This document shows, one piece after another, positions 310-53,142 of a stretch of 64,000 bases of DNA. The first letter of the stretch is position 1. Each line of letters begins with the position of its first letter. Location of the stretch: the IMG/VR virus record IMGVR_UViG_3300028829_003504, positions 1-64,000 of that record; one strand, written 5' to 3'. The notes beneath the pieces are model-generated. The model ran no database searches. It saw nothing but the letters and a program-made list of their open reading frames with translations, and had not been told where the DNA came from. The position numbers were made by a program, and so were the translations under genes.

Positions 310-313
310 CACT

Positions 314-3413: not shown

Positions 3414-3460
3414 TTAGTTACCTGGTAACTTTCTATTAAAACAAATTTGGAGTTTTAAAT

Positions 3461-4567
3461 ATGCAAAATTTACGTAACGTAAATCAAATGGTAACTAAGA
3501 CAGGTAGTCCCCTGAGCGGTGTTACGCTAAACGGCCGAGGTAATACTCCGTCAGTTTCAATCTCGAACGACGGTAATATCTCAGCTTACACTAATGCTGA
3601 TGCGTTAGCACAAGCCCAGCAATTAATGGCTTTAAGTTCTTCGCAGCAAGTTGTTCCTGCTCAGTCTGTTTCTACAGCCGCAGAACAACGCTTACAGAAT
3701 GAAAGTCGTCAAGAAGCAGTTGCCCGTGCTCAAGAATCGGACGTTGAATGGTCAGCACTTGGTGCCGCATTAGCGGATGAAATTCAAGAGCAAGCTGATC
3801 GTGACGGTTTCTTACGTCGCATTTGTCAAGGCCAAACTTTACGTCAAGGCGAATTGCCTCGAGTACCTATGGAGCAAAACATTGCGGAAGCAATTGTTGC
3901 AACTTCTGAGTCTCAAATGGGCTATCAACGCCTAACAGCTAAAGTAATGAACCCGCCTGAATTCCAAATCAAAGCAAACGTTCGCGTTGCTCAAATCGAT
4001 TTGGACCAAGTATCTGGTGATTTACTTGACAAAGCTTACAACGACGGCTTAAACGCTATCATGGTAGAAGAAGATCGTATGTGGAAACGTGCTGCCGACC
4101 AAGCTGTAGGTATCGTTAATCCGATTACATACATTCAAGGTCGTTTAAGTCCTCGTTACTTATCTGAGCTTCGTACGTCGGTAACTAACTGGAACTTACC
4201 TGTTTCAACTGCTATCTTAAGTAATGATTACTGGAACGACATTAATGGCGATCCTGAATGGGCTACAATGCTTGATCCAATCACACAGCATGATTTAGTT
4301 CTTCACGGCCAAATCGCAACGTTGCAAGGTATGACATTATTGACTGATGGTTACCGTGCACCTAACCAGATTGTTTTACGTCCTGGTGAAATCTACGTTG
4401 TTGCTGATGCTAAATACCACGGTTCTTACTCAACTCGTGGTGGTATTCGCTCTGAACCTACTTCAGGCGCTAATAGCGGTGATACTACTAAGGGCTGGTT
4501 AATGCACGAAACTTTTTCTTTTGTTTTGGCTAATCTACGTTCTGTTGCCAAAGGACAAAGAATCTAA
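3461..4567 (+). CDS. major capsid protein (HK97 fold)
   Basis: 368 aa; jumbo-phage capsid patterns such as EEDRMW and C-terminal GQIATLQGMTLLTDGYR...LRPGEIYVV...GWLMHE; strongly biased codons, strong RBS, head-module position. Confidence 0.85.
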   Translation: MQNLRNVNQMVTKTGSPLSGVTLNGRGNTPSVSISNDGNISAYTNADALAQAQQLMALSSSQQVVPAQSVSTAAEQRLQNESRQEAVARAQESDVEWSALGAALADEIQEQADRDGFLRRICQGQTLRQGELPRVPMEQNIAEAIVATSESQMGYQRLTAKVMNPPEFQIKANVRVAQIDLDQVSGDLLDKAYNDGLNAIMVEEDRMWKRAADQAVGIVNPITYIQGRLSPRYLSELRTSVTNWNLPVSTAILSNDYWNDINGDPEWATMLDPITQHDLVLHGQIATLQGMTLLTDGYRAPNQIVLRPGEIYVVADAKYHGSYSTRGGIRSEPTSGANSGDTTKGWLMHETFSFVLANLRSVAKGQRI

Positions 4568-4587
4568 GGTTAGTCCTTAAATTCTAA

Positions 4588-4758
4588 CAGGGTGTTGCAT
4601 TGCAGCGCCCAACCAAAACTCTTTCCGATTAATAGCGAACACGACCGGCCAGTCCTGACGAAGTCCAATCACTTTGTCTAACTCTATTAATCTGATTCAC
4701 AATGATTGGATTGAAACATGGAAAGAGTTTTGGTGGGCGCTGCTAGTGCCTTGCCTTG
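4588..4758 (+). ncRNA. long structured element in the capsid-gene 3' UTR
   Basis: About 30 bp stem 4597-4626/4720-4749 with G-U pairs on the + strand; inner stem 4662-4671/4703-4712; possible pseudoknot 4627-4635/4684-4692. Confidence 0.6.
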
Positions 4759-4802
4759 TGCATTGGTAAACTTCCCTGGGTCTATCAGCGATAGGCCTCT
4801 TT

Positions 4803-4836
4803 GGCTGAGTTGAAATACACTCAGTCTTTTTTTTTT
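4803..4836 (+). terminator. intrinsic terminator
   Basis: GGCTGAGT...ACTCAGTC hairpin followed by 10 T. Confidence 0.8.
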
Positions 4837-4849
4837 GTGGAGCGGTTTC

Positions 4850-5329
4850 ATGCAGAACAACGCTAAAGACCTTATTGCCTTAGCAGCCCTTGCCTTTAAT
4901 CGAAAAGATTTTGAGACAGCAGGTACATTATTTGCATCTGCTATGTCTACTAAAGATACCGGAGAGTTCATTGAAAGCCTTATGGCAGACAACTACTCAC
5001 TGGCGGCTTTGTCTAGTACACTTGAAAACATTTCGGAAGAAACAGAACTAGATAATCTAGCTTCTGCTGCTGCTACGTTAAGCCTTTCTATGGAAAGTAC
5101 ATTCAAAGATAAAACCAAAGCCGCCTTGTCGGAGAGTGGGTTTATTAATGAAGACGAATTATCTGAATCTTATAGTGGAGATCACTATGATGACGAGGAT
5201 GATGAAGATGACGATGACGATGACGATGACGCAGACGAGGATGATGGAGAGGATGATGAAGATCTAAAATCAGAATCTTCAACGATAGACTTCGGTGCCG
5301 TAAGGTCTCCAATTCAAATCATTGAATAG
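4850..5329 (+). CDS. acidic head-associated/scaffold-like protein
   Basis: ATG at 4850 with GGAG RBS preferred over the track start 4835; poly-D tract and S-E-S motifs as in 726..2684. Confidence 0.65.
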   Translation: MQNNAKDLIALAALAFNRKDFETAGTLFASAMSTKDTGEFIESLMADNYSLAALSSTLENISEETELDNLASAAATLSLSMESTFKDKTKAALSESGFINEDELSESYSGDHYDDEDDEDDDDDDDDADEDDGEDDEDLKSESSTIDFGAVRSPIQIIE

Positions 5330-5339
5330 TCCAAAATGA

Positions 5340-5380
5340 CCTCGACAGATGTAGTTTATGCTATATCCTCGAGGCTTTTT
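5340..5380 (+). terminator. possible terminator
   Basis: CCTCGA...TCGAGG stem followed by CTTTTT. Confidence 0.45.
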
Positions 5381-5389
5381 ACGTTTTAG

Positions 5390-6058
5390 GTGATAATCAT
5401 GACAGAACACGTACCAGCACGTTCCATTGATTTCCTAGATGGAGTGGAAAAGTCTGACGCTCCTCTTCTAGCTACGTTGCTTGGTTTTAGGACACAGGTA
5501 CAGAACCATCTACGTATTAAAAAGTTCCCTCTAATATTTGATGACGATCCTAAAGGCGCCATTAAACGGGCTTACGCAGGGTCTATATCTCTTCCTTACG
5601 GTTACTGGCGTATATCGTCAATGAACCTATCTGAGGACGACCAAGCTATACAACAAATCAAAAGAGCAGGCAGTGGCTTCTCTATGCCGGATTTAGAAGA
5701 TGCTGTTATTAATAAAGACTTCCTATTTAGGGCCAACATTGAGGTAGAGTGTACTTACATTAACGATGACCCTAGAGAAGTCTTAGCTTTCGTAGAGAGG
5801 TTAATGATCGTTAACGCTACTCGTATGTTAACCTTTGAGATACATCTTCCTACAGGCTCTAATTGGACTGTTACTCCTTTCGCTTCCGAGAAAGGTGCTA
5901 GTATTCCGCAAGCCACTAGGGAAGACGAAGGTAAACCTGGAGTAATGGAAGTTACCTTTAGTTATAGGCTGAGTACTAAGACTGGACTCATTAAACCTGT
6001 AGCTAAGATTAATAACGACGGTCACATAACTACTAATACCAAAATAGGGAGACCTTAA
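5390..6058 (+). CDS. putative neck/tail-completion structural protein
   Basis: 222 aa, between head genes and sheath; function inferred from position only. Confidence 0.45.
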   Translation: MIIMTEHVPARSIDFLDGVEKSDAPLLATLLGFRTQVQNHLRIKKFPLIFDDDPKGAIKRAYAGSISLPYGYWRISSMNLSEDDQAIQQIKRAGSGFSMPDLEDAVINKDFLFRANIEVECTYINDDPREVLAFVERLMIVNATRMLTFEIHLPTGSNWTVTPFASEKGASIPQATREDEGKPGVMEVTFSYRLSTKTGLIKPVAKINNDGHITTNTKIGRP

Positions 6059-6429
6059 TGCGAAAAAGAGCTAACCCGTATAAAGAGCAAGGACGAACCA
6101 TTGTAACACAGTTGGCTATGTCACTTACTAGAATTACTACACGTAGTAGTTTGTTTAAGCAGAGCGTATCAGCTAACATACCCGATGGTGAACCCTTTTA
6201 CAATATAGACCAGAATATGTCAGTTGATGTTCCACATGAAATCACAGGCATTAAGCATCTGCTTTATATTAAAACGCCACAGAAGGTTAATCTTACAATT
6301 GAAAAAGACGGAATGTCAATCACTCAAGAAGTCGATGGCCTTTATGTATTTCACGGTAAGATTGATGGGGTAATAAAAATTACCTCTGCACTTGAAGAAC
6401 CAGTCATGTGCAACTTGGTTTATTCGTAA
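6058..6429 (+). CDS. hypothetical virion protein
   Basis: 123 aa, translationally coupled (TAATG) to the upstream gene. Confidence 0.6.
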   Translation: MRKRANPYKEQGRTIVTQLAMSLTRITTRSSLFKQSVSANIPDGEPFYNIDQNMSVDVPHEITGIKHLLYIKTPQKVNLTIEKDGMSITQEVDGLYVFHGKIDGVIKITSALEEPVMCNLVYS

Positions 6430-6463
6430 TTTAGTTACATACTAAATAGAGGAGACATAGTAT

Positions 6464-8065
6464 ATGTTAGCAACTAACAGCCCTAGTGCTGGTGTCTATA
6501 CTGTCGAAAATGACAGGTCGCAACGTATTAAAGCGGCTTCTACTTCTATCGGAGCGATCGTTGGTGCAGCAAATAGAGGTCCAATAATGGAACCTACTAT
6601 CTGTTTCGACAATGAAGAATTCCGTCAGAAGTTCGGCAAGAAAGACCCACGCATCGGTTACATGCACTACTGCGCCGAAGCTTTTCTTGAGCAATCAAGA
6701 CTAAGCGTAGTACGTGTTGCATTAGATACAAAACTTGGCGGTGTTTACATTGCCACCGAATCGAATTTTTCCAAGCCTAGAACTTTACCTGCTGGTTTAG
6801 ACTCTGCTGACTTGTTAGACTTCGGAGTCGAAGACATAATGTTTATTTATGCCGTAGACCCGGGCAAATGGAATAACGAACTACGTATAGTTTGGTACCC
6901 AGATGTAAACGACGCAGAAGGTCAGGCTTTCTTTATTCAGGTATACGAAGGTAATACAGGTATCGCTACCGAGATTCACCATTGTACTACTCATGAAAAA
7001 GTTAACGGTAACGGTACTCAGATGTTTGTTGAAGACGTTATTAATGAAGGCTCAAATTTAATCCGAGTCCGCATTAATGAGAACCATCCTGCATTTGACA
7101 ACAATGATGAACCTGTACTTATAAACGCTGTAGGTGAAGCTACCCTTACTGGAGGCGATGATGGTTTACCTTTTAGCTTAGGTGAGCCTAGATTCGTAGC
7201 AGCGTGCTTACAAGCCTGGGAGTTGTATTCTGATTGGGAACAAGTCGAAGTTAATATCTTAATTAACGGCGGTTTGTCTATACCTTCAATCCAATTGAAG
7301 ATGGATGAAATCTGTATACGTAGACAGGATTGTATTGCTGTACTTGATATACCTAGCGATAAGCAAGACCCTATAGATGCAGTGGATTATCGACGTAATA
7401 CCTTGAATTTGAATAGTTCATTAAGTGCTTCTTATGCACCTGATATTTTAATCAGAGACAAAGATAACGGACGTGATCAATACGTTCCACCTTCAGGCCA
7501 TGTTGCAGCGCGTTACGCCTTTACGGATAATGACTTCGCTACTTGGTTTGCACCAGGCGGTCTTACTAGAGGTAGAATGCCTACTGCTATTGGCTTACGC
7601 CATAACTACAAGTTAAGTCACAGAAACATTCTTACTGAGAACCAAATCAACTCGATTATATCAGTTGAAGGTAACGGTATTAATATCTGGAATGCCGATA
7701 CTATGTATGCAATAAAGTCAGCATTAAACGACATTGGTATTCGTCGTATGCTATGCTTCTTACATTCTAGTGTTCGCATCAATAATTTGTATGCGGTATT
7801 TGAACCTAACGATAGTATCTTACGCCAACGTCAACGTTCTTCTGTGGAAGACTTGCTTGAGCCTATTTTACGAGGCCGAGGTTTATACTGGTACCAGGTA
7901 GTATGTGACGAAAGAAATAACACGGCTGAAACAACGGATAATGGCGACTTGATTGTTGACATTTACCTAGACCCAGTCCGATACACTAAGCGAATCCATT
8001 TAAGTGCGATTATTCCTCGTACAGGCCAAATAGATTTTGCTGAAAAACTTATTAACAATAGTTAA
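6464..8065 (+). CDS. tail sheath protein
   Basis: N-terminal SAGVYTVEND...GAIVGAANRGP, PGKWNN, PPSG, WFAPGG..RG and C-terminal IRR...FEPND motifs of contractile sheaths. Confidence 0.93.
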   Translation: MLATNSPSAGVYTVENDRSQRIKAASTSIGAIVGAANRGPIMEPTICFDNEEFRQKFGKKDPRIGYMHYCAEAFLEQSRLSVVRVALDTKLGGVYIATESNFSKPRTLPAGLDSADLLDFGVEDIMFIYAVDPGKWNNELRIVWYPDVNDAEGQAFFIQVYEGNTGIATEIHHCTTHEKVNGNGTQMFVEDVINEGSNLIRVRINENHPAFDNNDEPVLINAVGEATLTGGDDGLPFSLGEPRFVAACLQAWELYSDWEQVEVNILINGGLSIPSIQLKMDEICIRRQDCIAVLDIPSDKQDPIDAVDYRRNTLNLNSSLSASYAPDILIRDKDNGRDQYVPPSGHVAARYAFTDNDFATWFAPGGLTRGRMPTAIGLRHNYKLSHRNILTENQINSIISVEGNGINIWNADTMYAIKSALNDIGIRRMLCFLHSSVRINNLYAVFEPNDSILRQRQRSSVEDLLEPILRGRGLYWYQVVCDERNNTAETTDNGDLIVDIYLDPVRYTKRIHLSAIIPRTGQIDFAEKLINNS

Positions 8066-8660: not shown

Positions 8661-9335
8661 ATGTTAGTTTCGTTATCAGCTAAAGCCAAAGTGACAGACT
8701 TTCAGTGGTATACTTTTGAAGGTACGCGTAAGGTCTTGATAGAAAATGCAAACAGACACTACGACCTTGAGATAACCAAGGGTGAGCATTTCGGCCTAAA
8801 GTTAGGACGTACTCATTTCTGGCTGGTTCAAGTCGAAGAGGAATCTGGGGATATTATCAAATTTAAGTTAGAGCCTAAGAACGCTCGAACTATAGTTGAG
8901 AAGTCAAAAGGATTCAGCGGTAAGATAGGTAAGACTAAAGTCCAGCCTGGTACTTTCGGCAAAGAGCGTAAAGCCTCAGGTAAACCTCTTGGTACTACTC
9001 CTACTAGCGCATCACCTTTACCTGGTGGTGTACCTAGAGAAAATAAAGTAATAACCAAAGCAGTTAAAAAGATTAAGTTCCCAGGAGCCTCTAAGATAAC
9101 TCATGTTATGACTCAACGTGCCATCGAGGGTGAGATTTACCATTACTATGATATCAGCGACACATTACCTGGTTATCGACGTAAGCATAAACTTACTGTT
9201 AGAGAGGTAGGTAACTGGGCTAAAGATATTGAAGCCGCCGCCGAGTCTTCTATCAAGGGTATTGATGCTGAGATTGGTACGGTAAGATGGAAAGGTAAGT
9301 TGATAAGAGTGATGGCCTTATTAGAATTGGAGTAG
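8661..9335 (+). CDS. basic protein with MLVSLS leader, putative internal head protein
   Basis: 224 aa, Lys-rich; N-terminal domain aligns with an internal domain of 31602..34613 and with 10628/11337/25016. Confidence 0.6.
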   Translation: MLVSLSAKAKVTDFQWYTFEGTRKVLIENANRHYDLEITKGEHFGLKLGRTHFWLVQVEEESGDIIKFKLEPKNARTIVEKSKGFSGKIGKTKVQPGTFGKERKASGKPLGTTPTSASPLPGGVPRENKVITKAVKKIKFPGASKITHVMTQRAIEGEIYHYYDISDTLPGYRRKHKLTVREVGNWAKDIEAAAESSIKGIDAEIGTVRWKGKLIRVMALLELE

Positions 9336-9338
9336 TCT

Positions 9339-9860
9339 ATGTCAATGAAGAAGACTCTTGAGTTAGCCAAATCACTTAACGAAGGAGATAAGACTCCCTT
9401 ACCTAAATGGTTATGGAAAGTCGAGTCAATGCCTGCCTTCGACGGTGTGACATTAGAGCCTGAATACATCCAACAGTTTGGACTACCTTTTCCTAAGTTC
9501 GATACAGGTAATCAAATTGAAGTCGCCGGCGCTACGTTAACGTTTCCCGGTAAAATAGATGTGTCAAGTGTCACTATGCTTATACACGAAGACAATAAAG
9601 TCCGTGCATTGAAATATATATTCCAATGGATGTCAAACATTAGAAACCCAGTTACTGGGGGTTACTTCTTACCATCTAGATACAAGAAAGGTATTAACGT
9701 AGTCCTCCATGATAACAAGGGTGATCCCTTAGCCAAAGCTTCTTTACGAGGCGTATGGCCTAGTGCCATCCAAGATTGGGAACTGGTATATAACGATGAT
9801 GGGTTTCATCAAGTCAGTGTTCAACTGGAAGTTGACGCTTCCTACTTAGAAATTCTGTAA
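9339..9860 (+). CDS. second tail-tube-fold protein (tube initiator-like)
   Basis: FPGK...HED...W...GVWP pattern parallels the tube at 8077. Confidence 0.7.
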   Translation: MSMKKTLELAKSLNEGDKTPLPKWLWKVESMPAFDGVTLEPEYIQQFGLPFPKFDTGNQIEVAGATLTFPGKIDVSSVTMLIHEDNKVRALKYIFQWMSNIRNPVTGGYFLPSRYKKGINVVLHDNKGDPLAKASLRGVWPSAIQDWELVYNDDGFHQVSVQLEVDASYLEIL

Positions 9861-39247: not shown

Positions 39248-39793
39248 TTAATATACGTGTTTATGTATGCAACCTAAAGCTCTAGTAGCGGCTTGGCTAA
39301 GGTTATCGTTTGTAATTCTGTATGTGTACTTGAACGCGTGGCACACTTCGTCTTCGGCAATATGGATACGTCTTTCGATTTCATCTTCTTTATCACCACG
39401 CTTCTTAAGACGCTTTCTTAAAATATCAATACTAGGAGGTTCTATGAATATAGAAACCACATTGTCGTACTTTTCAATAAAGGCATCAGCGCCATTTATA
39501 TCTAATATGATAATAGGATGTCTGTCACTGCTCTCCACGTCCTTAAGGGATGATATAGTAGTACCGTACAGGTTACCGTTGTATTCATTATACTCAATGA
39601 ATTCTTCCCGGGCGGCCATCATTTCAAAGCTGCTTCGCTCCATAAAATGATAGTCTATGCCATTCTTTTCGTCGTCGCGTTGGTTACGACTTGTATGAGT
39701 TACAACCGTAGCTAGACTTTTATTCCACGTTAAAAGTTTCTTTAGTATAGAATCTTTTCCTACACCACTAGGCCCTATTAGTACTATTATCAT
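39248..39793 (-). CDS. gmk: guanylate kinase
   Basis: GPSGVGKD, THTSR..R..E.NGIDYHF, YNGNLYGT, IFIEPPS. Confidence 0.93.
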   Translation of the reverse strand: MIIVLIGPSGVGKDSILKKLLTWNKSLATVVTHTSRNQRDDEKNGIDYHFMERSSFEMMAAREEFIEYNEYNGNLYGTTISSLKDVESSDRHPIIILDINGADAFIEKYDNVVSIFIEPPSIDILRKRLKKRGDKEDEIERRIHIAEDEVCHAFKYTYRITNDNLSQAATRALGCIHKHVY

Positions 39794-40099: not shown

Positions 40100-40730
40100 A
40101 CGTCATTTCTATAGCAAGTTCAGGATCACCCCCACTAGCGGTGTCTACGTTATTATGCAAATGGCAATCCTTAAACAGCATTTTAGTAATAGGTTTACCT
40201 CCGTACTTGCGAGTACACTTACCTCTAGGTAACTTAGCACCTTTAGAAAACGCATCGTTCTTCATCAAATAATATCCTTCAGGACAATCTTCTTGCCAGG
40301 GTACTGAGTATATATCGATGTCAGTACCTATAGGAGGAACGTCTTTCTGCTCAATAGGATTGACCATATCAACCCATCTGTTGAAGATACTCCCAATAGG
40401 CTTATGTTCTTCAAATAATACATCGAATGAACCTCGTATACTTGCTGACTTATCTCGGAATCCCATAGGCTCTTGAGGTCTATCTAGGATAGCTACATTA
40501 ACCTTACTATCTCTACTTATAGCAGTTGACATAGCGCGACCAAAAGTAGCGTCATGCCCTAATATAACAGGCTTGAACTCCGAGCATTTACCTATTACCT
40601 TAGGTAAGCTATTAAACTCAATAGTAACGCCACTTAGTTTTAATTCAGGTCTTTTCAATCGATCCAGTGCCTGTTCGTGTATCTCTGCGGACCAAACATC
40701 CTTGGGTGTACCACCAGTCTTGTTAGTCAT
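40059..40730 (-). CDS. protein with a tail-tube-like C-terminal half
   Basis: GSFDVLFEE...IGSIFNRWVDMV...GKPI...ELAIEMTY parallels GTMSISFQE...ITTILEDWHELI...GEPI...ELSATFSF of the tube. Confidence 0.5.
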   Translation of the reverse strand: MTNKTGGTPKDVWSAEIHEQALDRLKRPELKLSGVTIEFNSLPKVIGKCSEFKPVILGHDATFGRAMSTAISRDSKVNVAILDRPQEPMGFRDKSASIRGSFDVLFEEHKPIGSIFNRWVDMVNPIEQKDVPPIGTDIDIYSVPWQEDCPEGYYLMKNDAFSKGAKLPRGKCTRKYGGKPITKMLFKDCHLHNNVDTASGGDPELAIEMTYGSSDASQTIFSK

Positions 40731-41613
40731 TTAGTATATCCCAAAGTCGCTGTTTAGTAATTGTCGCACCTGCTGCATTCGTATGACCACCGCCTCCAAA
40801 TGCCTCAGCATGGTCGCGGGCAGAATGGTCGGCACTCCTAAAGCTCAGGTTAACTTCATCGTTCTTATCAATAGCGTAACACATAATGGTATCGTGTTTA
40901 TCTTTAATAGATTCAGCCAACTCACTAATAATATGTCCGGGGCAGTTAACTGCAAATACATTACCTTTACTTAGCTTAATAACACTACCACGCGCAACAT
41001 GGTCGCTAATCATTTTATCAACGTAGCTTAAAACCGCTTTACCTTGTTGAATAAACTTAACATAGAAGGCGCTATTTACATTAACCTTGTTTAAGGTGAA
41101 GTCTGAGTAAAGAGCAAGAGATATCTCACCGATAGGAGTTGCTTGCAGTGCAAGGTGTACAGCTTTAGCATTGGGGAAATCTTGCTGCCATCCTTTACGC
41201 CATAGGTCTCTTCTACCTACATCCTCCACTATCGGGTGGTAAGGTGTTTTGTATAGATAATCCCAAGCTAGCATAGCTCCTGAACGGTCGATGTCGAGTA
41301 CTAGTTCTACTGACTCAGGTATAGTACCTTCATCGGACATTAATTTAAGGGCATCTATGGCTTTACCGTGATGATCCATCATAGTAACATGATTAGACTT
41401 GGTTGCCAGTAAGGTAAGGTCTGCGCCGTGAAAAGAAAAGTCAACAACAAAGATTCGATGGTAAACACCTTCGTCGATATCAGGTAGGGGCTCACTGTAT
41501 TTAACAGCCTGCATTATAATTTCGTGGTCTTTACTTCGGAAGTAAGAGTGGACAACTGCTGCTGCGGTTTTACCGTCGTTACATTGGGCATGGTACATAA
41601 CTAGAATTTTCAT
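40723..41613 (-). CDS. DHH/DHHA1 phosphoesterase
   Basis: YH..C.DG, VVDFS, DHH, SGAMLAW, SFRS, GGGGH..AAG. Confidence 0.9.
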   Translation of the reverse strand: MKILVMYHAQCNDGKTAAAVVHSYFRSKDHEIIMQAVKYSEPLPDIDEGVYHRIFVVDFSFHGADLTLLATKSNHVTMMDHHGKAIDALKLMSDEGTIPESVELVLDIDRSGAMLAWDYLYKTPYHPIVEDVGRRDLWRKGWQQDFPNAKAVHLALQATPIGEISLALYSDFTLNKVNVNSAFYVKFIQQGKAVLSYVDKMISDHVARGSVIKLSKGNVFAVNCPGHIISELAESIKDKHDTIMCYAIDKNDEVNLSFRSADHSARDHAEAFGGGGHTNAAGATITKQRLWDILND

Positions 41614-41622
41614 AAATACTAC

Positions 41623-42291
41623 CTGATATAGTTTTCCTATTAAGTTAAAATTTGACGGCTAACAGATCGCTACATGCTACCGAGTATGCAGTGGAGGGCT
41701 ACTACCTTTGAATCCGGTAGCCCGAAATGCGATAACCTGTCTCCCTAACTGGGTCGTCCTGGACATAATTATCCATTCAGTTTACTATAATACGATAGCA
41801 GTTAGAGGTCTGGACCTAGGATTACATTGAGGGAAAAGGGCTAGAAAGTTACCCGATAAAACTCTATATTGTAACCAACTGATTAAATGATCAGTTCCGA
41901 TACACATGACAGTCAGAGGCTAGACTCTGTTCGCTACTCTGACTGGGACTCAAAATTAGGTTGACGATTAACAAACTCTGCTTATCATGAAGCTAAGGAA
42001 CACGTCTCCTTAAGGCAGCTATAAATAACCACCTTTCAGGGACACGCTGCTTGCGATCTCGTCTTCTCAGATTGCCTTTGGTTGAGATTAAGTAATTGCC
42101 TACTAAGCCTGGCCCCCGCTAAAAAGCATCCGCCAGTTATTTTCTCTATGATACACACTGAGTTCTGGGCTAAAGATATATCGACTGATTGAAGGATGGT
42201 TGGGCACCCTAACTGCTGTCATTATACCAATACCTTATATCCGAGGCATTCCGATTCGGTCGATAGTCTATCAATTAAACTAAACTATCAG
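41623..42291 (+). ncRNA. large (about 670 nt) highly structured non-coding RNA, class unrecognised
   Basis: About 715 bp ORF-free gap with more than 10 helices including long-range pairings; G-U wobbles favour the + strand. Confidence 0.65.
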
Positions 42292-42328
42292 TGAGCAGAT
42301 TTTTACATTTGAGTTTAAATTACATTCG

Positions 42329-42514
42329 TCAACGAATTAAATCTTCCGTAGGACTTATACTATAGTAAGAATTCATGCAGTCTGCATCGGTACAAAAGCG
42401 ATTACCTTGATCATCCCCATATACTCTAGAATTACATTTGTTGTGAAATTTAGCTAGGCTGTTAATCCAAAATTGATGTGGACCAAGTTTTATATCATCA
42501 TTAACTTTACTCAT
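42329..42514 (-). CDS. small Cys-containing hypothetical protein
   Basis: 61 aa, downstream of the promoter motif at 42545. Confidence 0.5.
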   Translation of the reverse strand: MSKVNDDIKLGPHQFWINSLAKFHNKCNSRVYGDDQGNRFCTDADCMNSYYSISPTEDLIR

Positions 42515-42544
42515 AGATTTATATCCTTCGCTACTTGTATCTAT

Positions 42545-42556
42545 TGTTTACAGTTT
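42545..42556 (-). promoter_or_regulatory. promoter-like motif AAACTGTAAACA
   Basis: Copy of the repeated motif. Confidence 0.6.
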
Positions 42557-42573
42557 AGTTGATTATACTAGAC

Positions 42574-42777
42574 TTAGGCGTCAGACAGCCACGTCATCGT
42601 TTCATGCCAACGAGTTATTGACTTAGACCATTTATATCCATTAGCACCGACGTAGCATACCGTTATAGGATACTCGTCATTAGTGCTATGTTCATTACGG
42701 ATATCATCGACTTCATATATACGGCCGCTATGGTGTTTCCATACACTCCTGAGCGATGGTATTTTATTCTTAGGCAC
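42574..42777 (-). CDS. DUF1653-like small protein
   Basis: WKHHSGRIYEV...V.Y...G..W pattern; GTG at 42777 with GGAG RBS. Confidence 0.55.
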   Translation of the reverse strand: MPKNKIPSLRSVWKHHSGRIYEVDDIRNEHSTNDEYPITVCYVGANGYKWSKSITRWHETMTWLSDA

Positions 42778-43177
42778 AGTTATTCTCCAGCATAGTAATA
42801 ATGCTTTGGACACATTCCTCTACGTCGAATGACTTAGGTACCATTACGGTCCCGATACGTTCACGCCTAGAGGGTGTGTCTTTAGGTTGAATTATTTGCT
42901 CAACATAGACTTCTCTACCTATTATCTCACCTACCATATTAAGGACAGCGTACATAACTAAAGGCATTTCTTCACACTCTCCGTTAGTCATTGAGGCGTT
43001 AACTCGCCAGTGGTCATCCCGACTGACAGTAGTATTTGGATTTAATCCGACCAGTTGTACTTGCAGTCTTCTACTCACTTCATTTGTAGCGAGTCTTACG
43101 TCAGTACTGCTTCTTACTTCTATAGTCAGCTCGTTCTCGGCTAACCACGTTACTAGGTTCATAGTAATCTCCATCAT
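42770..43177 (-). CDS. hypothetical protein
   Basis: About 130 aa, downstream of the promoter motif at 43189. Confidence 0.6.
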   Translation of the reverse strand: MMEITMNLVTWLAENELTIEVRSSTDVRLATNEVSRRLQVQLVGLNPNTTVSRDDHWRVNASMTNGECEEMPLVMYAVLNMVGEIIGREVYVEQIIQPKDTPSRRERIGTVMVPKSFDVEECVQSIITMLENNCA

Positions 43178-43277: not shown

Positions 43278-44729
43278 CTACGCAGCTAACAGTTTTTCAT
43301 AGAAACCGTAGGCCACTTCCCTAACTTCATCGAAGGTTTGATTGCGAAGAAGCTCGCCGGTATTCCAGACAGGCTCAAGAAGCCCGCTATTTATACGGTT
43401 ATCAACTTGCCTCCAAACGATATCACCAAATTCATTAAACTCTACGCAGAAGTAACCTTCTTTAGAATGTTTATTCGGATCAGCTTTAGGACGTTTGCTG
43501 GTTTTAGTAGGAACGCCGTTAATAGTCATCATGCTTGCTTTCATAGCGAAGCCACCATCGTCACGGCCGTGAGCTTGTAGTAGTTTACCGCCTTGACCAA
43601 ACACTAAATTTAAAGCGCTGAGCTTTTTGCTTCTCATTAAGTCTTGGATATCAGTGATAACTTGTACGTCAGTTCCGTCACCCTGTATTACACGAATGTA
43701 ATCAGGTAGAACTTTATAGCCTTTTCTATTGATCTCGTATCCGAAGATTTCCATCAAACGCTCAACTATACGTACAGGTTCGTTAACTGCATGACCTGAG
43801 TCAGGGCGTATTATCAAGCAACCCTTTCCCTTACCTTCTTTGAATGCTGCAATGACTTCATCTTTAAGTTCTTCCCAGTAGCCTAAAGCACGGTCTGTGT
43901 CATAGGTATCAGGTAGTACACTTACTTTGTCGCCGTTTGCTACATACGTTTTAAGTAGGAAAGAGAAAAGTTCTTTTTCACGGGCCTCACCCCAAGATAG
44001 AACTACGTTATGCTCAATAGCAAAAACAGAATATGCTGACATACCCTCTTTAGTGCCGTAAGCTTGCTCAGCAGTCCATGTACCTTCAAGAGTATCACTA
44101 CCCTTAGAAGTAACTTGGTGAGACATTCCACCAACTGATGCACCTTCACCACAATTTACACCTCTAGCACCGAAGTCATTAAGAGCAAAATCCATATAGC
44201 CGGCGATTAGATCATCGTCTATACTTTCATTGGCAAATTTACCTATAATAACTTTCTGCTCTAGACTCTTAGTTGCAACGGTAATAGAATACCAGATGCG
44301 CTGAATTAAAGCTTCGAAGTACATTGGTAACCACGCAAACTCTTTATCAGTGTTGGTAATAACCATCAGTGGAGTTTTCTGAGCCGTTACAGTACCTTCA
44401 GGTAGTGCGCGGAACTCAAGTGGAAGTTTACCATCATGCTTCGTAACAATAAGTTCCCAACCTTTACGATTGAACTTAGCGCCGTGCCGCAATGCGAAGT
44501 CCTCGCAGATATCAATCATTTCCATTGTGATACGTTCACTAAAGTAACGCTTAAGGATATATTGCAATCCAAAGAACATTGTTTTAGTCATACCGTAACG
44601 GCTTTCAAGATAGACGTAAGAGAATTCTAAACCTTCAACCAATTGTTCGTAGTGACCCAATTTGTAGCTGTCGGTTCTCAAGATTAATGGTACATCTGTA
44701 ATTAACATATTAGTGTTAAAAAGTTTCAT
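43278..44729 (-). CDS. nadV: nicotinamide phosphoribosyltransferase (NAMPT)
   Basis: TDSYKLGH, FFGLQY, DFGARG, GSDT, EHNV, DTYD, IRPDSG, IQGDG, FGQGGKLLQ, FAMKAS, KHSKEG. Confidence 0.95.
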   Translation of the reverse strand: MKLFNTNMLITDVPLILRTDSYKLGHYEQLVEGLEFSYVYLESRYGMTKTMFFGLQYILKRYFSERITMEMIDICEDFALRHGAKFNRKGWELIVTKHDGKLPLEFRALPEGTVTAQKTPLMVITNTDKEFAWLPMYFEALIQRIWYSITVATKSLEQKVIIGKFANESIDDDLIAGYMDFALNDFGARGVNCGEGASVGGMSHQVTSKGSDTLEGTWTAEQAYGTKEGMSAYSVFAIEHNVVLSWGEAREKELFSFLLKTYVANGDKVSVLPDTYDTDRALGYWEELKDEVIAAFKEGKGKGCLIIRPDSGHAVNEPVRIVERLMEIFGYEINRKGYKVLPDYIRVIQGDGTDVQVITDIQDLMRSKKLSALNLVFGQGGKLLQAHGRDDGGFAMKASMMTINGVPTKTSKRPKADPNKHSKEGYFCVEFNEFGDIVWRQVDNRINSGLLEPVWNTGELLRNQTFDEVREVAYGFYEKLLAA

Positions 44730-47336: not shown

Positions 47337-48413
47337 TTAGTCTTGTTGAGTGAAACCTGTTCCGTAACCACTAGCTAACATGTTTTGAATAATGAAGTAG
47401 TGATCCGCGTACAAGGCTTTACTCATTCTACGTACTTGAGCAAAAGGGAACCAACGAGCTTCTTTAGCATCGTCCATCCCTTTTACCTTAGGTAATTTTG
47501 AATCAGTAAGAATGAAAGATCCAACATGTGTGGTGAAATCACCACGGTCATCTCGCATAGGGTCTTCAAACATCTTCTTACCCCGATATGCCTGTTCTAG
47601 CGCACGAGGCGGTACGTTAATGTCTGTTTCTTCTTTAAGCTCACGTAAGATACAATCTCTTGCATACTCACCTGGGTTCTTAAAGCCACCAGGTAAAGCC
47701 CATTGGTCTTTGCCTGGGAAGTCTCTGCGTTTAATCAACAATAAGTGACCGTGGCAAACTACAAGTGCATCTCCCGTTATGAAATTAATTCCGTGAGGCA
47801 GATCCTTGTAGTCATTCTTGTATGCTAGGACTGAGCGATTGTGACCTACCAACCACTCGTACTCCTTTGTTTTACGAAACTTCTCCAAAAACACATTAGT
47901 CGAAGTTGGACAATTCGCAAAAGAAACTTGAGGATATACTGCGTTGTTGAAGTATATCTCACGTAACGGAGTTGCAGATATAGCATCCAAGTTATCTACA
48001 TGATGTTTCTTCCAACGAGGAAAGCCTCTAAGATAATAACTAGTATTATCTTTCAAGTGACCAACAAGTGCAATGTCATCGGGAAGACCCAAATGCTGCG
48101 CATGGTCATGGGCTAAACGTTGTACTTCTGATTCCCAATCATATTCAACATAAAGGTAATCGTTGAGCGGCTTAACTTGACATTTGAAGGATTTGGTTCC
48201 TGTCAGTGCAGGTCGAATCATTTCTAAACGTTCTTCGTATGAGAACGGATTTGCCAAGCTACGACTACGGTTGATTGATCCAATAAGTATCAATACATTG
48301 TCAGCAATCTTGCACGCTTCATCAATTAAGTAATCGTGACCGTTATGGTATATATGACTACGCATAATCACAACAGCCAAAGCTACCTTACCTTTTACTT
48401 TAAAATCTTTCAT
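47337..48413 (-). CDS. bifunctional NMN adenylyltransferase / ADP-ribose pyrophosphatase (NadM-Nudix)
   Basis: HNGH, GS...RS..NPF...ER, GHLKDNTSYYL, ISATPLR, WALPGGF...RELKEET, DDAKEARW, DH. Confidence 0.93.
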   Translation of the reverse strand: MKDFKVKGKVALAVVIMRSHIYHNGHDYLIDEACKIADNVLILIGSINRSRSLANPFSYEERLEMIRPALTGTKSFKCQVKPLNDYLYVEYDWESEVQRLAHDHAQHLGLPDDIALVGHLKDNTSYYLRGFPRWKKHHVDNLDAISATPLREIYFNNAVYPQVSFANCPTSTNVFLEKFRKTKEYEWLVGHNRSVLAYKNDYKDLPHGINFITGDALVVCHGHLLLIKRRDFPGKDQWALPGGFKNPGEYARDCILRELKEETDINVPPRALEQAYRGKKMFEDPMRDDRGDFTTHVGSFILTDSKLPKVKGMDDAKEARWFPFAQVRRMSKALYADHYFIIQNMLASGYGTGFTQQD

Positions 48414-50777: not shown

Positions 50778-50854
50778 GATAATATCCTAGTTGTTTAAAA
50801 TTTACGTTTTTAATTGTTTTTTCTTTTTCGGGATTTTAAGCCTACACAAATAGG

Positions 50855-50879
50855 AAAGGGCAGCCGAAGCCACCCTTTT
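50855..50879 (-). terminator. UUCG-loop hairpin/terminator
   Basis: GGGTGGC-TTCG-GCTGCCC-TTT on the - strand; near-copy of 37143-37174. Confidence 0.65.
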
Positions 50880-51115
50880 AGGTATATGAGTTTATAGAAA
50901 CCAATCTTTGCGGTCGTCTTGATTACGACACCTCCGCTTTACCTAAGACAAAGACTTAGAAACCTTGGGGAAGTCTTTGTCACGGAGAATGGTCATTGCA
51001 TACTTTCTATTTAGTATTTTAGACTGAGGCAGTAGTTTGTACCTAAGTACGTTTACCTCAATTAGGTGTCTACCCAATATTATGGAGTAATATTTGTCAT
51101 ATACTATTACTCACT
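50880..51115 (-). ncRNA. candidate small structured RNA
   Basis: ORF-free unit between a promoter motif (51123) and a terminator (50879); stems 50927-50933/51064-51070, 50947-50957/50971-50981, 51025-51029/51056-51060, 51085-51092/51105-51112. Confidence 0.5.
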
Positions 51116-51122
51116 TAGTATG

Positions 51123-51134
51123 TATTTACAGTTT
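51123..51134 (-). promoter_or_regulatory. promoter-like motif AAACTGTAAATA
   Basis: Exact copy. Confidence 0.7.
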
Positions 51135-51135
51135 C

Positions 51136-53142
51136 CTATATAGCTACTTCACCATCTAGCTTGGGGCCATGTTCATAATTATGGAGAACAAAATGGTCAC
51201 CTGTCAACTCGTCGAAACTCTCAAAGGGCTTGACTTCTAATGAAGGCATAGGTTTAACTTCTTGCTTCATCTGTTCTTCAAATAGATCTCGATGGAAGTC
51301 ATAGATATGATAGTCACCAAACATGTGAAAGAAGTTACGTGCTGCCATACCTGACTTCTGGGCAAAGGCCATAAGTAACGCACTGTAACTGCCTATGTTA
51401 AAGGGAACTCCGATGAACCAATCCGCGCTGCGCTGGTACATTGTCATATCAATGAAGTACTTAGGTACACCTTTAGAATCGAAGAATTCACCGACGACTC
51501 TTAGATGTTCCTCTTTATCGGCACAAGACATAGAGAATAACTCTTGACTAATTTTACTTTTGATTGTAACCACTACCATAGGGTTCTCAGGATTATAGTC
51601 TAAAAGACCTTCTCTCTCCATGAAGTAAGAGTCTTGCATTAACTCCGCAGTACGTATGTTCGACCAATGTTCATAGCGGTCGGAGTGACTCATAGGACTT
51701 GTACCTAATTGGAACATCATGTGACAGGGAGGTAACGCTTGCTGACCGACCGTTGCGTTTTCATGAGGCTCAAAATATCTTACTTTAGGAGCATCCACGT
51801 AGTCAAGTAAAGCTTCGAGTAATTCCTCCTCGTTCAGACCTTCGGGGAGATCTGAAGGTCCTCCATTGTGTAGGAGACTTTCGCAGTAATCACGCGCTTG
51901 CATTATGGGTGCTTCACCTCCAGAGTCAAGACGCCGTTCGGCCTCATCCATCCACTTCACATTAGCCATTACTTTTTCAATTTCACCGTCCAGATAGTGC
52001 TCTTTGCGATCTACTTGGTTTGCAAATGCTACTTGCGTAACAGGAGTTAAGCCTGGGTTCAAGGCAGTAACTAACATACGGCGGTCATTAGGATTGTTCT
52101 TCAAACTTTCGGCAACGGCATCCAGTTGATCAAACTTCTTAGTATACACAGTATGCTCGGCATCCCATTTACCTTCAATACCTAACGCATTAAGAACTCT
52201 ATAGTAAGTTTCAACGAAAGCGTTGTACTCAGGTAACTCTAAGACATTGTCCCCGAAGTACATTTGGATAGTGCCTTCACTGAGATCACGCCCAGAAGCT
52301 TCGGTAGTAGTAATTATACTAGAGCGCATGCCGTTTTGTTCAAGATAGCCCTGGAAGTCTTCGAGAGTGAAGTCGCCATTTTTAATCTTAGCCCGTAGTT
52401 CTTCATCCATTCTACTAGTTTGGTCAAAAGAGCCTTGTGCAATATAGTTCTGGTTTATTAAGAAGTCAATCATACCAGTATTAGTATCAGCCACGGTGCG
52501 TGTGTCTTCCCATGCTCGCCATTGTGCTCCGTATACAGGACCTAGATTCCCATTGTTGTCAGCCCAACCGTCCCATATTTTAGCACCTAATGTTTTAATG
52601 TTCGTTTCACCTCGACATAGCCAACCCAGCTCTTTCATGATACCTTTAAAGGCTGTGAACTTAGTAGTGACTAGAGGGAAACCATCACGCATATCGAATT
52701 GCATCATGTGGCCGAACAGCTTAGTAGTAGGCGTTGTAGTTCTGTTTCCGCTACGCGCTCCTGCGTAAAGAATGTCCTGAGCCGCAGATAGATACTGTAC
52801 ATCGACATGTCTTTTATTAGGATGATTCTGCCAGGTATTAGGTACTTCTTTTTCTAACGTACCTGATTTAACAAAAGTAATAACAGCATTACGGCCATCA
52901 TAATTACTGTACTGCGCCTGTACTACCACAAGAGGTCCACGTAATGTGTAAGGGCCTGTACGGTCTTCGTAGTGGCAATGCTGTATTAAATCACCTTCCT
53001 TGAAGCGGCTAGACATATCGCGGTCTATATTAAAGAAAGAAACAATATGGTAATGATCAATGTCAGTAGCCATCAGGTAATCACATTTAAGATGGACTGA
53101 TTTACCCATCATAACTTGATAAGGTATTTTAACTGATTCCAT
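51136..53142 (-). CDS. thyA: thymidylate synthase with N-terminal extension and three large insertions
   Basis: NRT, FPLVTTK, EL.W, IWDGWA, LGPVYGAQWR, DRRM, LPPCH, YQRSAD..GVPFN, GDYHIY. Confidence 0.92.
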   Translation of the reverse strand: MESVKIPYQVMMGKSVHLKCDYLMATDIDHYHIVSFFNIDRDMSSRFKEGDLIQHCHYEDRTGPYTLRGPLVVVQAQYSNYDGRNAVITFVKSGTLEKEVPNTWQNHPNKRHVDVQYLSAAQDILYAGARSGNRTTTPTTKLFGHMMQFDMRDGFPLVTTKFTAFKGIMKELGWLCRGETNIKTLGAKIWDGWADNNGNLGPVYGAQWRAWEDTRTVADTNTGMIDFLINQNYIAQGSFDQTSRMDEELRAKIKNGDFTLEDFQGYLEQNGMRSSIITTTEASGRDLSEGTIQMYFGDNVLELPEYNAFVETYYRVLNALGIEGKWDAEHTVYTKKFDQLDAVAESLKNNPNDRRMLVTALNPGLTPVTQVAFANQVDRKEHYLDGEIEKVMANVKWMDEAERRLDSGGEAPIMQARDYCESLLHNGGPSDLPEGLNEEELLEALLDYVDAPKVRYFEPHENATVGQQALPPCHMMFQLGTSPMSHSDRYEHWSNIRTAELMQDSYFMEREGLLDYNPENPMVVVTIKSKISQELFSMSCADKEEHLRVVGEFFDSKGVPKYFIDMTMYQRSADWFIGVPFNIGSYSALLMAFAQKSGMAARNFFHMFGDYHIYDFHRDLFEEQMKQEVKPMPSLEVKPFESFDELTGDHFVLHNYEHGPKLDGEVAI

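What the first reader, a model, noticed from the sequence alone, without database searches (positions are those of the whole stretch)
41623..42291. About 670 nt ornate non-coding RNA, antisense to the surrounding genes
The largest ORF-free gap in a dense genome is packed with helices. The ends pair (41623-41634/42282-42291). A 5' multibranch domain is closed by 41654-41659/41753-41758 and contains 41666-41670/41729-41733, 41673-41688 and 41696-41723. Hairpins lie at 41877-41896 and 41910-41945, and nested long-range stems at 41945-41952/42159-42166 and 41983-41988/42148-42153. An interrupted helix of about 28 bp (41786-41816/42198-42226) has its 3' strand inside the loop of stem 42181-42191/42252-42263, implying a large pseudoknot or a conformational switch. 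G-U wobbles consistently favour the + strand. It lacks tmRNA, RNase P and group I/II intron signatures. The size class recalls ROOL/GOLLD/OLE RNAs, but I cannot assign it.
Basis: partly seen in the sequence, partly recalled or inferred. Interest (0 to 1): 0.82.

Follow-up and report, generated by a model that had tools for sequence, protein, structure and literature searches.

The report
New large structured jumbo-phage RNA
The 715-base gene-free gap in this uncultured jumbo phage holds a conserved, heavily base-paired element of about 660 bases that matches no described RNA family. It is most likely a new large non-coding RNA, but which DNA strand encodes it and what it does are still open.

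Summary
The gap 41614-42328 is real and is the largest ORF-free stretch in the window. It has 14-20 stops in every frame, and its two homologues have 8-16. The window is a 262-kb IMG/VR jumbo-myovirus contig.

Homologous elements sit at the same place, upstream of a DHH phosphoesterase gene, in two other uncultured phages (L003, L004/L005). The flanking proteins there are only 49-56% identical. The element keeps invariant blocks separated by variable arms, with indels that are not multiples of three.

The consensus fold is far better than column-shuffled alignments (z = -5.4 and -5.8). Of 95 curated pairs, 24 show Watson-Crick to Watson-Crick double changes, against 1-6 in slid controls.

There is no Rfam 15 match for any of the three copies, no match in GenBank phages, and no tRNA nearby.

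Five of its helices are conserved. The end-to-end pairing, the 5' closing stems and the 28-bp 'switch' helix are window-only. The claim that G-U pairs favour the + strand is not supported (12 versus 8). Weak evidence leans to the gene-sense (-) strand.

Verdict: a new family of large structured phage RNA, known from three sequences, with strand and function unresolved.

The parts
41636..42296 (.). Conserved core of the element (~660 nt); alignable to L003:8688-9367 and L005:2311-2937
   Evidence: Alignments; nhmmer; coordinate map
41673..41688 (.). Hairpin P5a. The outer stem is CAU/AUG in the window and CAC(A)/(U)GUG in the homologues. The loop carries the conserved UACC(G/C).
   Evidence: U-A to C-G change
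41696..41723 (.). Hairpin P5b. Stems are GGGCUAC/GUAGCCC in the window, GGAC/GUCC in L005 and GGG(C)CUAG/CUAGCCC in L003.
   Evidence: 7-8 bp in all three, with different sequences
41677..41798 (.). Candidate pseudoknot PK. The P5a loop (41677-82) pairs with 41793-98: CUACCG/CGAUAG, UUACCC/GGGUAA and CUACCG/CGGUAG.
   Evidence: (columns 121-126/240-245), 64 and 71: 2 double changes. The window's only mismatch is C-A on the + strand, which is U-G on the - strand.
41722..42259 (.). Outer long-range helix Ha (arms 41722-31 / 42252-59). Tentative.
   Evidence: 20 of 24 cells Watson-Crick, 2 double changes, 4 mismatches. A local alternative exists.
41738..42248 (.). Long-range helix Hb (arms 41738-42 / 42244-48)
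   Evidence: UGUCU/AGGCA, GCCUU/GGGAC, UGCCU/AGGCA
41743..41807 (.). Arm H1 (stem 41743-51 / 41799-807). The stem has three different sequences.
   Evidence: 5-6 pairs with double changes. This is the best-supported helix.
41809..42176 (.). Central long-range helix H2 (arms 41809-19 / 42165-76). It is formed by the two conserved, look-alike blocks GGTCCAGACC and CCAGAAC.
   Evidence: 28 of 30 cells Watson-Crick. It is conserved rather than covarying.
41820..41876 (.). Arm H3 (stem 41820-24 / 41872-76). Its interior is variable: 47 nt in the window, 15 in L005 and 44 in L003.
41877..41896 (.). Invariant hairpin H4 with invariant flanks. The gene-sense reading is GTATCGGAACTGATC ... AATCAGTTGG.
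41899..42058 (.). Helix H5 (arms 41899-906 / 42052-58). Tentative: both arms are conserved and there is no double change.
41910..41945 (.). Arm H6. The outer stem is CAGU/ACUG, CGAC/GUCG and CAAC/AUUG. L005 carries a 17-nt insertion. The tip motif is conserved and reads AGCAGCAAC on the gene-sense strand.
   Evidence: 3 double changes
41978..42039 (.). Helix H6c (arms 41978-84 / 42035-39)
   Evidence: pair types differ among the three sequences at 4 of 5 positions
41983..42153 (.). Helix X (arms 41983-89 / 42147-53): UAUCAUG/UAUGAUA, CGCCAUG/UAUGGCG and UGCCACG/UAUGGCA. It crosses H5 and H7, so it is either a pseudoknot or an alternative to them.
   Evidence: (columns 447-453/636-642), 64, 71 and 72: 3 double changes
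42066..42162 (.). Helix H7 (arms 42066-70 / 42158-62): CUCAG/CUGAG, against CCCAG/CUGGG in L005
42084..42146 (.). Helix H8 (arms 42084-87 / 42143-46): GAGA/UCUC, against AAGGU/ACCUU in L005
42109..42136 (.). Arm H9: CUGGC/GCCAG against CUGAC/GUCAG. Tip insertions are variable, giving arm lengths of 28, 49 and 52 nt. The internal loop is purine-rich on the gene-sense strand.
42180..42189 (.). Small hairpin H10
42194..42242 (.). Variable arm H11. Each homologue forms a hairpin here, but the region aligns poorly.
42262..42293 (.). Terminal hairpin H12, next to the stop codon of the upstream gene. Stems are GAUAGU/ACUAUC, CAUCA/UGAUG and CCGUCGA/UCGACGG.
41692..41697 (-). Invariant CCTCCA on the gene-sense strand, which reads as a GGAGG-type motif on the + strand. 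It can pair with a downstream purine tract: the ribosome-binding site of the next gene in L003, or the 5' half of the terminator-like hairpin in L005.
40723..41613 (-). Flanking gene: DHH-family phosphoesterase. It served as the syntenic anchor for finding homologues.
42329..42514 (-). Flanking 61-aa ORF with no family match. The upstream neighbour differs in each of the three phages.

Best explanation
**What it is.** The gap encodes a previously undescribed family of large (~650-660 nt), multi-domain structured non-coding RNA. It is confined, as far as the data reach, to a small clade of uncultured jumbo myoviruses.

**Shown**
- The element is non-coding.
- It is under purifying selection.
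- It keeps a common nested architecture. Outer long-range helices Ha/Hb enclose arm H1 and a central long-range helix H2. H2 in turn encloses arms H3, H4, H5/H6 and H7/H8/H9. Hairpins H10-H12 follow, and a separate P5a/P5b domain sits at the other end.
- There are two candidate pseudoknots, PK and X.

**Inferred**
- It is read from the same strand as all surrounding genes (window - strand), as part of or processed from the long leftward transcription unit of nucleotide and NAD-metabolism genes.
- It acts in trans as a folded RNA: a scaffold, an RNP core, or an RNA-only assembly like other giant phage RNAs. It is probably not an antisense regulator or a DNA site.
- The biochemical function is not known.
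For: **Non-coding**
- Stops in all six frames in all three homologues.
- Indels are not multiples of three.

**Under selection**
- The element aligns at about 65-69% DNA identity, with invariant runs of 15 and 10 nt.
- The flanking DHH proteins are only 49-56% identical, and the neighbouring genes differ among the three phages.

**Structured**
- Consensus-fold energy is -72.9 and -74.0 kcal/mol, against -44 +/- 5 for 60 column shuffles: z = -5.4 and -5.8.
- In 17 curated helices (95 pairs), 253 of 285 cells are Watson-Crick and 24 pairs carry double changes. Controls slid by 1-3 columns give 44-63 Watson-Crick cells and 1-6 double changes.
- Variable-length hairpin insertions sit at helix tips.

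**Not a known family**
-.

**Gene-sense strand (weak)**
- 42 compensatory pairs against a null of 28 +/- 5 on the - strand (z = 2.6), versus 27 against 26 +/- 5 on the + strand (z = 0.25).
- Of 33 local-arm comparisons (11 arms in 3 phages; H9 lies inside H8), 21 are more stable on the - strand, 10 on the + strand, and 2 tie (sum -362 vs -322 kcal/mol).
- Unpaired G exceeds unpaired C on the - strand in all three sequences.
- L005 has a terminator-like hairpin plus T-tract on the gene-sense strand just 3' of the element.
- In L003 the element fills the whole space between the stop and start codons of co-oriented genes, so gene-sense read-through is hard to avoid.

**Not tied to one downstream gene**
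- L003 has a 210-aa gene between the element and DHH.
Against: - Only three distinct sequences exist, so no pair reaches formal statistical covariation, and the curated helix set was partly chosen on these same sequences.
- The strand is not settled:
  - G-U versus A-C counts are symmetric, 12 vs 8 and 19 vs 13.
  - Helices H2, Hb and H10 keep pairing only through G-U on the + strand.
  - Single-sequence z-scores are mixed: L003 favours +, L005 favours -.
  - Unpaired A exceeds U on the + strand in two of the three sequences.
- There are no transcription data.
- No promoter or terminator is conserved in all three.
- The trans-acting function is purely an analogy.
Confidence: 0.5

Rival explanations
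1. One reading: the same structured RNA, but transcribed from the + strand. It would be antisense to the gene block and act as an independent, convergently transcribed ncRNA.
For: - H2 in the window, Hb and H10 keep pairing through G-U only on the + strand.
- 41945-52/42159-66 is maintained between the window and L003 by C-G to U-G and G-U to A-U changes on the + strand.
- L003's MFE z-score is -3.0 on the + strand against -0.9 on the - strand.
- Hairpin H12 would be a 3'-terminal stem-loop.
Against: - There is no overall G-U excess on the + strand.
- Local arms and the compensatory-pair count favour the - strand.
- In L003 a + strand promoter would have to lie inside the 210-aa coding sequence.
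- Every gene from 34770 to 63961 is on the - strand.
- No terminator-like site was found on the + strand in the window.
Confidence: 0.25
2. A giant cis-acting leader on the gene-sense strand. A ligand- or protein-sensing fold would control the gene immediately downstream by termination, anti-termination or masking of the ribosome-binding site.
For: The invariant CCUCCA on the gene-sense strand can pair with three different downstream targets:
- in L005, the 5' half of the terminator-like hairpin (-10.1 kcal/mol, 7 bp);
- in L003, the GGAG ribosome-binding site of the next gene (-7.2 kcal/mol);
- in the window, only weakly (-3.6 kcal/mol, 3 bp).

The element always lies directly upstream of a co-oriented gene.
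Against: - The downstream gene is not the same: DHH in the window and L005, an unrelated 210-aa gene in L003.
- A terminator-like hairpin is present in only one of the three.
- In the window the complementary tract is 24 nt from the start codon and is not the ribosome-binding site.
- At 650 nt, with more than 15 helices, it is several times larger than known riboswitch or T-box leaders (general knowledge).
Confidence: 0.13
3. A DNA-level element, such as a replication origin, packaging site or protein-binding array, whose conserved blocks are binding sites rather than RNA helices.
For: - G-T and A-C mismatches are equally frequent, which is what a strand-symmetric constraint would give.
- Two conserved blocks are near-palindromic look-alikes, GGTCCAGACC and GGACCAGAAC.
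- No transcript evidence is available.
Against: - 24 Watson-Crick to Watson-Crick double changes sit in nested helices spanning up to about 530 nt. That is not expected for duplex DNA sites.
- There are no iterons or repeat families beyond two-copy matches.
- There is no A+T-rich unwinding region: G+C is 0.40-0.43, the same as the flanks.
Confidence: 0.07
4. A decaying gene remnant or neutral spacer whose apparent structure is chance.
For: - The window sequence alone folds only marginally better than shuffles: z = -1.2 to -1.8.
- The strongest single helix in the window (28 bp) is lineage-specific.
Against: - It is conserved at coding-like DNA identity across phages whose proteins are about 50% identical.
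- Consensus-fold z is below -5.
- The frame is not conserved, and none of the flanking proteins has a match inside the gap.
Confidence: 0.02

Closest known systems
GOLLD and ROOL RNAs (giant, ornate RNAs of phages and prophages)
   Same: - Size class of about 600-800 nt.
- Many helices and predicted pseudoknots.
- Phage-encoded, with function unknown (bioRxiv 10.1101/2024.12.08.627333, read).
   Different: - No match to any of the 4227 Rfam 15 covariance models, even at E <= 10. From memory, the GOLLD and ROOL models are among them; this was not checked.
- GOLLD and ROOL are 'often near tRNA islands', whereas this 64-kb window has no tRNA.
- This element sits among NAD and nucleotide-metabolism genes of a jumbo myovirus.
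- It is known from 3 sequences rather than many.
- Multimer formation was not tested.
OLE RNA
   Same: About 600 nt, with an ornate secondary structure interspersed with highly conserved nucleotides (PMC9723947, abstract seen).
   Different: - OLE is chromosomal, in Gram-positive extremophiles, and works with Oap proteins.
- No Rfam 15 model, OLE's presumably included, matches here.
- No partner genes are conserved next to this element.
Candidate structured RNAs from the IMG/VR-wide screen (PMC10690425)
   Same: Intergenic, phage-borne, and detected by comparative structure.
   Different: - Those candidates are 29-151 nt long and had to match at least 3 unique IMG/VR regions.
- This element is about 660 nt and occurs on one IMG/VR contig only, so that screen could not have reported it.
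Large cis-regulatory leaders (riboswitches, T-boxes)
   Same: Located upstream of a co-oriented gene. Possible pairing of a conserved CCUCC with a downstream terminator stem or ribosome-binding site.
   Different: - Several-fold larger.
- The downstream gene is not conserved.
- An expression platform is seen in one of the three only.

Membership tests
GOLLD, ROOL, OLE, HEARO and other large Rfam RNA families | Score against the family's covariance model (sequence plus structure) | tested here: not met
   No Rfam 15 family matches the window at gathering score. At E <= 10 on 41400-42600 the only hit is a chance snoRNA match outside the element. L003 and L005 give no hit at E <= 5.
GOLLD / ROOL | Typical genomic setting next to tRNA genes or islands in phages and prophages | tested here: not met
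   ARAGORN finds 0 tRNA or tmRNA genes in the 64-kb window. The setting is described in the paper read.
GOLLD / ROOL / OLE | Homo-oligomeric RNA-only assembly (cage or dimer) | not testable with these tools
   Needs native gels, mass photometry or cryo-EM.
tmRNA, RNase P RNA, group I and group II introns | Covariance-model match; tag peptide for tmRNA | tested here: not met
Structured non-coding RNA (generic) | Conserved secondary structure beyond that expected from sequence conservation | tested here: met
   Consensus-fold z = -5.4 and -5.8 against column shuffles. 24 double-change pairs against 1-6 in slid controls.
Structured non-coding RNA (generic) | Statistically significant covariation (R-scape-type test on a deep alignment) | tested here: inconclusive
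   Only 3 distinct sequences were found after the searches.
Structured non-coding RNA (generic) | A transcript of defined strand and ends | not testable with these tools
   No expression data. The strand indicators conflict.
Cis-regulatory leader / riboswitch | The same regulated gene immediately downstream in all members, with an expression platform | tested here: not met
   The downstream gene is DHH in the window and L005 but an unrelated 210-aa gene in L003. A terminator-like hairpin is present only in L005.
Replication origin / iteron array | Repeated binding sites and an A+T-rich unwinding region | tested here: not met
   Only short two-copy repeats. G+C is 0.40-0.43, the same as the flanks.
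Protein-coding gene or pseudogene | A conserved reading frame, or similarity to a protein family | tested here: not met
   8-20 stops per frame in all three. The frame is not kept across indels. tblastn with the neighbours' proteins finds nothing inside the gap.

The most novel reading that the evidence does not exclude
This is a new class of giant phage RNA machine, either a ribozyme or a self-assembling RNA-only particle comparable to the ROOL and GOLLD nanocages. It would be specific to jumbo phages and embedded in their NAD+ and nucleotide-salvage gene block, where it takes part in host takeover or counter-defence.
Probability: 0.15. Interest if true: 0.88.

Novelty: new variant of a known kind. 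Interest (0 to 1): 0.65.

Why it matters
Structured RNAs longer than about 500 nt with unknown function are very rare; to my knowledge fewer than a dozen bacterial or phage classes are known. Each one characterised so far has shown unexpected RNA capabilities: ROOL and GOLLD form cages, and OLE forms a membrane RNP.

A further, unrelated family in jumbo phages would add a target for structural and functional work. It would also show that large-RNA discovery in viral metagenomes is far from saturated, since the published IMG/VR screen was limited to motifs of at most 151 nt with at least 3 hits.

Its position among NAD+-salvage and nucleotide-metabolism genes gives a concrete setting in which to look for a function.

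Tried and rejected
**Searches for more homologues that added nothing**
- blastn of all three copies against GenBank phages.
- Pattern scans of IMG/VR, JGI metagenomes and GTDB genomes with conserved blocks. These returned only the same phage (L007, L019 identical) plus chance hits, checked by nhmmer.
- 80 IMG/VR loci encoding distant DHH relatives: no element within 10 kb.
- The 210-aa L003 protein: no relatives.
- Contigs carrying close NAMPT relatives (L100-L103): all end before the element.
- No second copy in the window.

**Rejected readings**
- Pseudogene or recoded gene.
- Candidate promoter motif AATGTAATT: not enriched.
- A + strand small ORF behind the GGAGG motif: by eye, its frame is not conserved across the indels.

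**Strand tests that gave no decision**
- Single-sequence z-scores.
- Helix duplex energies.
- G-U versus A-C counts.
- A versus U content of loops.

**Not done**
- Structure-aware alignment: mafft-qinsi is not installed.
- A covariance model. The full element exceeds the 400-column limit, and a sub-domain model would have been mostly a sequence profile, which nhmmer had already covered.

Full report
**Where the window comes from.** The window belongs to IMGVR_UViG_3300028829_003504, a 261.8-kb viral contig. It encodes tail-sheath proteins, a helicase and other phage functions, so it is an uncultured jumbo myovirus. Its DHH protein has only 25-32% identity to cultured jumbo phages. Every ORF of 100 aa or more from 34770 to 63961 that is not nested inside a longer ORF lies on the - strand. 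The finding sits between a DHH-family phosphoesterase gene (40723-41613, -) and a 61-aa ORF (42329-42514, -). Nearby genes encode guanylate kinase, NAMPT, a cytidylyltransferase-NUDIX protein and thymidylate synthase.

**The observation.**
- The gap 41614-42328 (715 nt) is the largest ORF-free stretch in the window; the next is 416 nt.
- All six frames carry 14-20 stops.
- G+C (0.40-0.43) does not differ from the flanks.
- Taken alone, the sequence folds only slightly better than dinucleotide shuffles: z is about -1.6 to -1.8 on the + strand and -1.15 on the - strand.

**Homologues.** Searching the DHH protein found three relatives at 49-56% identity, and their contigs were fetched.
- In L005 (and the identical L004), a 723-nt gene-free gap lies directly upstream of DHH.
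- In L003, a 311-kb contig, a 695-nt gap lies upstream of DHH with one extra 210-aa gene in between.
- The three gaps align over their whole length, with mean column identity 65%.
- Invariant runs include GTATCGGAACTGATC, AATCAGTTGG, GGTCCAGACC, CCAGAAC, ATCGCAT and CCTCCA in the gene-sense reading. Between them lie variable segments and indels of 1, 2, 4, 5, 7, 11, 17... nt.
- DNA identity in the element (68.8% over 459 nt between the window and L003) is like that of the neighbouring coding regions.
- The genes on the upstream side differ among the three phages.
- All frames are also closed in L003 and L005.
- The element is therefore a conserved, non-coding unit that stays put while its neighbours change.
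- A fourth copy (L019, a second JGI metagenome) is identical to the window.

**Is there a conserved structure?**
- RNAalifold on the three sequences gives -72.9 kcal/mol on the + strand and -74.0 on the - strand. Sixty column shuffles that keep gap pattern and conservation class give -44 +/- 5, so z = -5.4 and -5.8 (structures).
- I curated 17 helices (95 column pairs). Of 285 cells, 253 are Watson-Crick, 12 are G-U on the + strand, 8 are A-C on the + strand (that is, G-U on the - strand), and 12 are other mismatches.
- 24 pairs show a Watson-Crick to Watson-Crick change on both sides.
- Sliding the 3' partners by 1-3 columns gives 44-63 Watson-Crick cells and 1-6 such pairs.
- The best helices are:
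  - H1 (41743-51/41799-807), with three different sequences;
  - X (41983-89/42147-53);
  - the outer stem of H6;
  - PK (41677-82/41793-98);
  - H6c, H9, H7, H8 and H12.
- Arms H3, H6, H9 and H11 carry lineage-specific hairpin insertions at their tips, as expansion segments do in large RNAs.
- Caveat: three sequences cannot give formal covariation statistics, and the curated set was chosen on the same data. The shuffle z-scores do not have that circularity.

**Architecture (window coordinates; the helices are the same on either strand).**
- Ha (41722-31/42252-59, tentative) and Hb (41738-42/42244-48) close the main body.
- Inside them lies arm H1, then the conserved long-range helix H2 (41809-19/42165-76). 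H2 is made by the two look-alike blocks.
- H2 encloses H3, the invariant hairpin H4, H5 (tentative) with H6 and H6c, and H7 with H8 and H9.
- Hairpins H10 and H11 follow H2.
- H12 ends the element next to the upstream gene's stop codon.
- A separate domain (41640-41723) holds hairpins P5a and P5b.
- Two pairings cross the nested set. PK joins the P5a loop to the interior of H1. X joins the H5 interior to the H7 interior. Both have compensatory changes and are candidate pseudoknots, or alternatives to H5 and H7.

- Supported by comparison: hairpins 41673-88, 41696-723, 41877-96 and 41910-45, and stem 41983-88/42148-53.
- Not conserved: the end pairing 41623-34/42282-91, 41654-59/41753-58, 41666-70/41729-33, and stem 42181-91/42252-63.
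- Also not conserved: the ~28-bp helix 41786-816/42198-226, at -33.9 kcal/mol in the window against -10.7 and -10.3 in the others. It exists because CCCTAACTG occurs twice in the window only.
- The proposed large pseudoknot or switch is therefore a single-lineage feature at best.
- 41945-52/42159-66 is kept in L003 but not in L005, and it competes with H7 and H2.

Symmetric or mixed indicators:
- G-U versus A-C in a no-GU consensus: 19 vs 13.
- The same count in the curated helices: 12 vs 8.
- Summed duplex energies of 18 helices: -377 (+) vs -387 (-) kcal/mol.
- Single-sequence z-scores: L003 favours +, L005 favours -, the window neither.
- Loop A versus U content.

Leaning to the - (gene-sense) strand:
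- RNAalifold finds 42 compensatory pairs against a null of 28 +/- 5 on the - strand, and 27 against 26 +/- 5 on the + strand.
- Of 33 local-arm comparisons, 21 are more stable on the - strand, 10 on the + strand, and 2 tie (-362 vs -322 kcal/mol).
- Unpaired G exceeds unpaired C on the - strand in all three sequences.
- The H9 internal loop is purine-rich and the conserved H6 tip is A-rich on the - strand.
- L005 has a terminator-like hairpin plus T-tract on the gene-sense strand immediately 3' of the element.
- In L003 the element fills the space between a stop codon and the next start codon of co-oriented genes.
- All neighbouring genes are on the - strand.

Leaning to the + strand:
- H2 in the window, Hb and H10 stay paired only through G-U on the + strand.

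I put the gene-sense strand at roughly 0.6.

**What it is not.**
- No Rfam 15 family matches any of the three copies.
- There is no tRNA or tmRNA in the window.
- GenBank phages hold no similar DNA.
- There are no iterons and no A+T-rich region.
- Nothing in the 64-kb window that I annotated resembles a reverse transcriptase, and the genes within about 5 kb on either side are nucleotide- and NAD-metabolism genes or unassigned ORFs. A retron- or DRT-type template RNA is therefore unlikely.
- The IMG/VR-wide structured-RNA screen reports motifs of 29-151 nt that hit at least 3 IMG/VR regions (PMC10690425). This element occurs once in IMG/VR, so it was out of that screen's reach.
- I found no description of it in the literature searches.

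**How it most likely works.**
- Shown: a conserved, non-coding, multi-domain fold.
- Inferred: an RNA, probably gene-sense, made with the middle or early nucleotide-metabolism genes and acting as a folded molecule in trans.
- The closest analogues in kind are GOLLD and ROOL. They are phage-borne RNAs of 600-800 nt with unknown function that form RNA-only cages. Membership fails on the model match and on the tRNA-island setting.
- One cis-regulatory alternative deserves a test. The invariant gene-sense CCUCCA can pair with the 5' half of the L005 terminator hairpin (-10.1 kcal/mol) and with the ribosome-binding site of the next gene in L003 (-7.2). It pairs only weakly in the window (-3.6).
- Against that alternative: the downstream gene is not conserved, and the element is several times the size of known leaders.

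**Verdict.** This is a real and apparently undescribed family of large structured phage RNA, supported by three sequences. Interest is moderately high. The limits are the tiny family size, the unresolved strand and the absence of any functional clue.

Noticed in passing
window 51136-53142 (-): This thymidylate synthase ORF is 668 aa, about twice the usual size. The Pfam domain matches in three separate stretches, and PHROG hits cover residues 104-365 and 562-668. That suggests an insertion of a couple of hundred residues with no family match, possibly an intein or an inserted domain.
   Followed up: no
window 43278-44729 (-), 47337-48413 (-), 40723-41613 (-), 39248-39793 (-); L003 1039-12468: The element sits in a conserved block of NAD+ salvage and nucleotide-metabolism genes: NAMPT, a cytidylyltransferase-NUDIX protein, a DHH phosphoesterase and guanylate kinase. 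The same set surrounds it in L003.
   Followed up: partly
window 41743-41751 and 42207-42215: CCCTAACTG occurs twice, in the window only. It could be a lineage-specific alternative fold, or chance.
   Followed up: partly
window 41692-41697; L003 about 9305-9371; L005 2868-2952: CCTCCA is invariant on the gene-sense strand and resembles an anti-Shine-Dalgarno sequence; on the + strand it reads as GGAGG. Its best downstream partner is the ribosome-binding site of the next gene in L003 and the terminator-like stem in L005.
   Followed up: partly
L005 2931-2952: A terminator-like hairpin (8 bp, 5 of them G-C) plus a T-rich tail lies on the gene-sense strand between the element and the DHH start. 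It is absent from the window and L003.
   Followed up: partly
L019 (Ga0055584_100001604) 1-7158: A contig from a second JGI metagenome is 100% identical to the window over 7.2 kb, including the element. The same phage therefore occurs in at least two samples.
   Followed up: yes
window 310-725 and 50778-51135: These are the next largest ORF-free gaps, at 416 and 358 nt. They were not examined for conservation or structure.
   Followed up: no
window 42574-42813 (-): This 79-aa ORF matches only the first 67 positions of a 505-position PHROG profile (phrog_4767). It is 57% identical to the N-terminal half of a 130-aa protein in L005. It may be a small stand-alone domain or a truncated gene.
   Followed up: partly
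window 41895-41914 vs 42249-42268, and 41878-41891 vs 42184-42197: Internal direct repeats (TTCCGAT..., ACTGATT...) hint that the H4 module and the H10/H11 region may be an ancient internal duplication. L005 carries a second AUCGGAACUG...CAGUU hairpin at the H11 position (read by eye).
   Followed up: no
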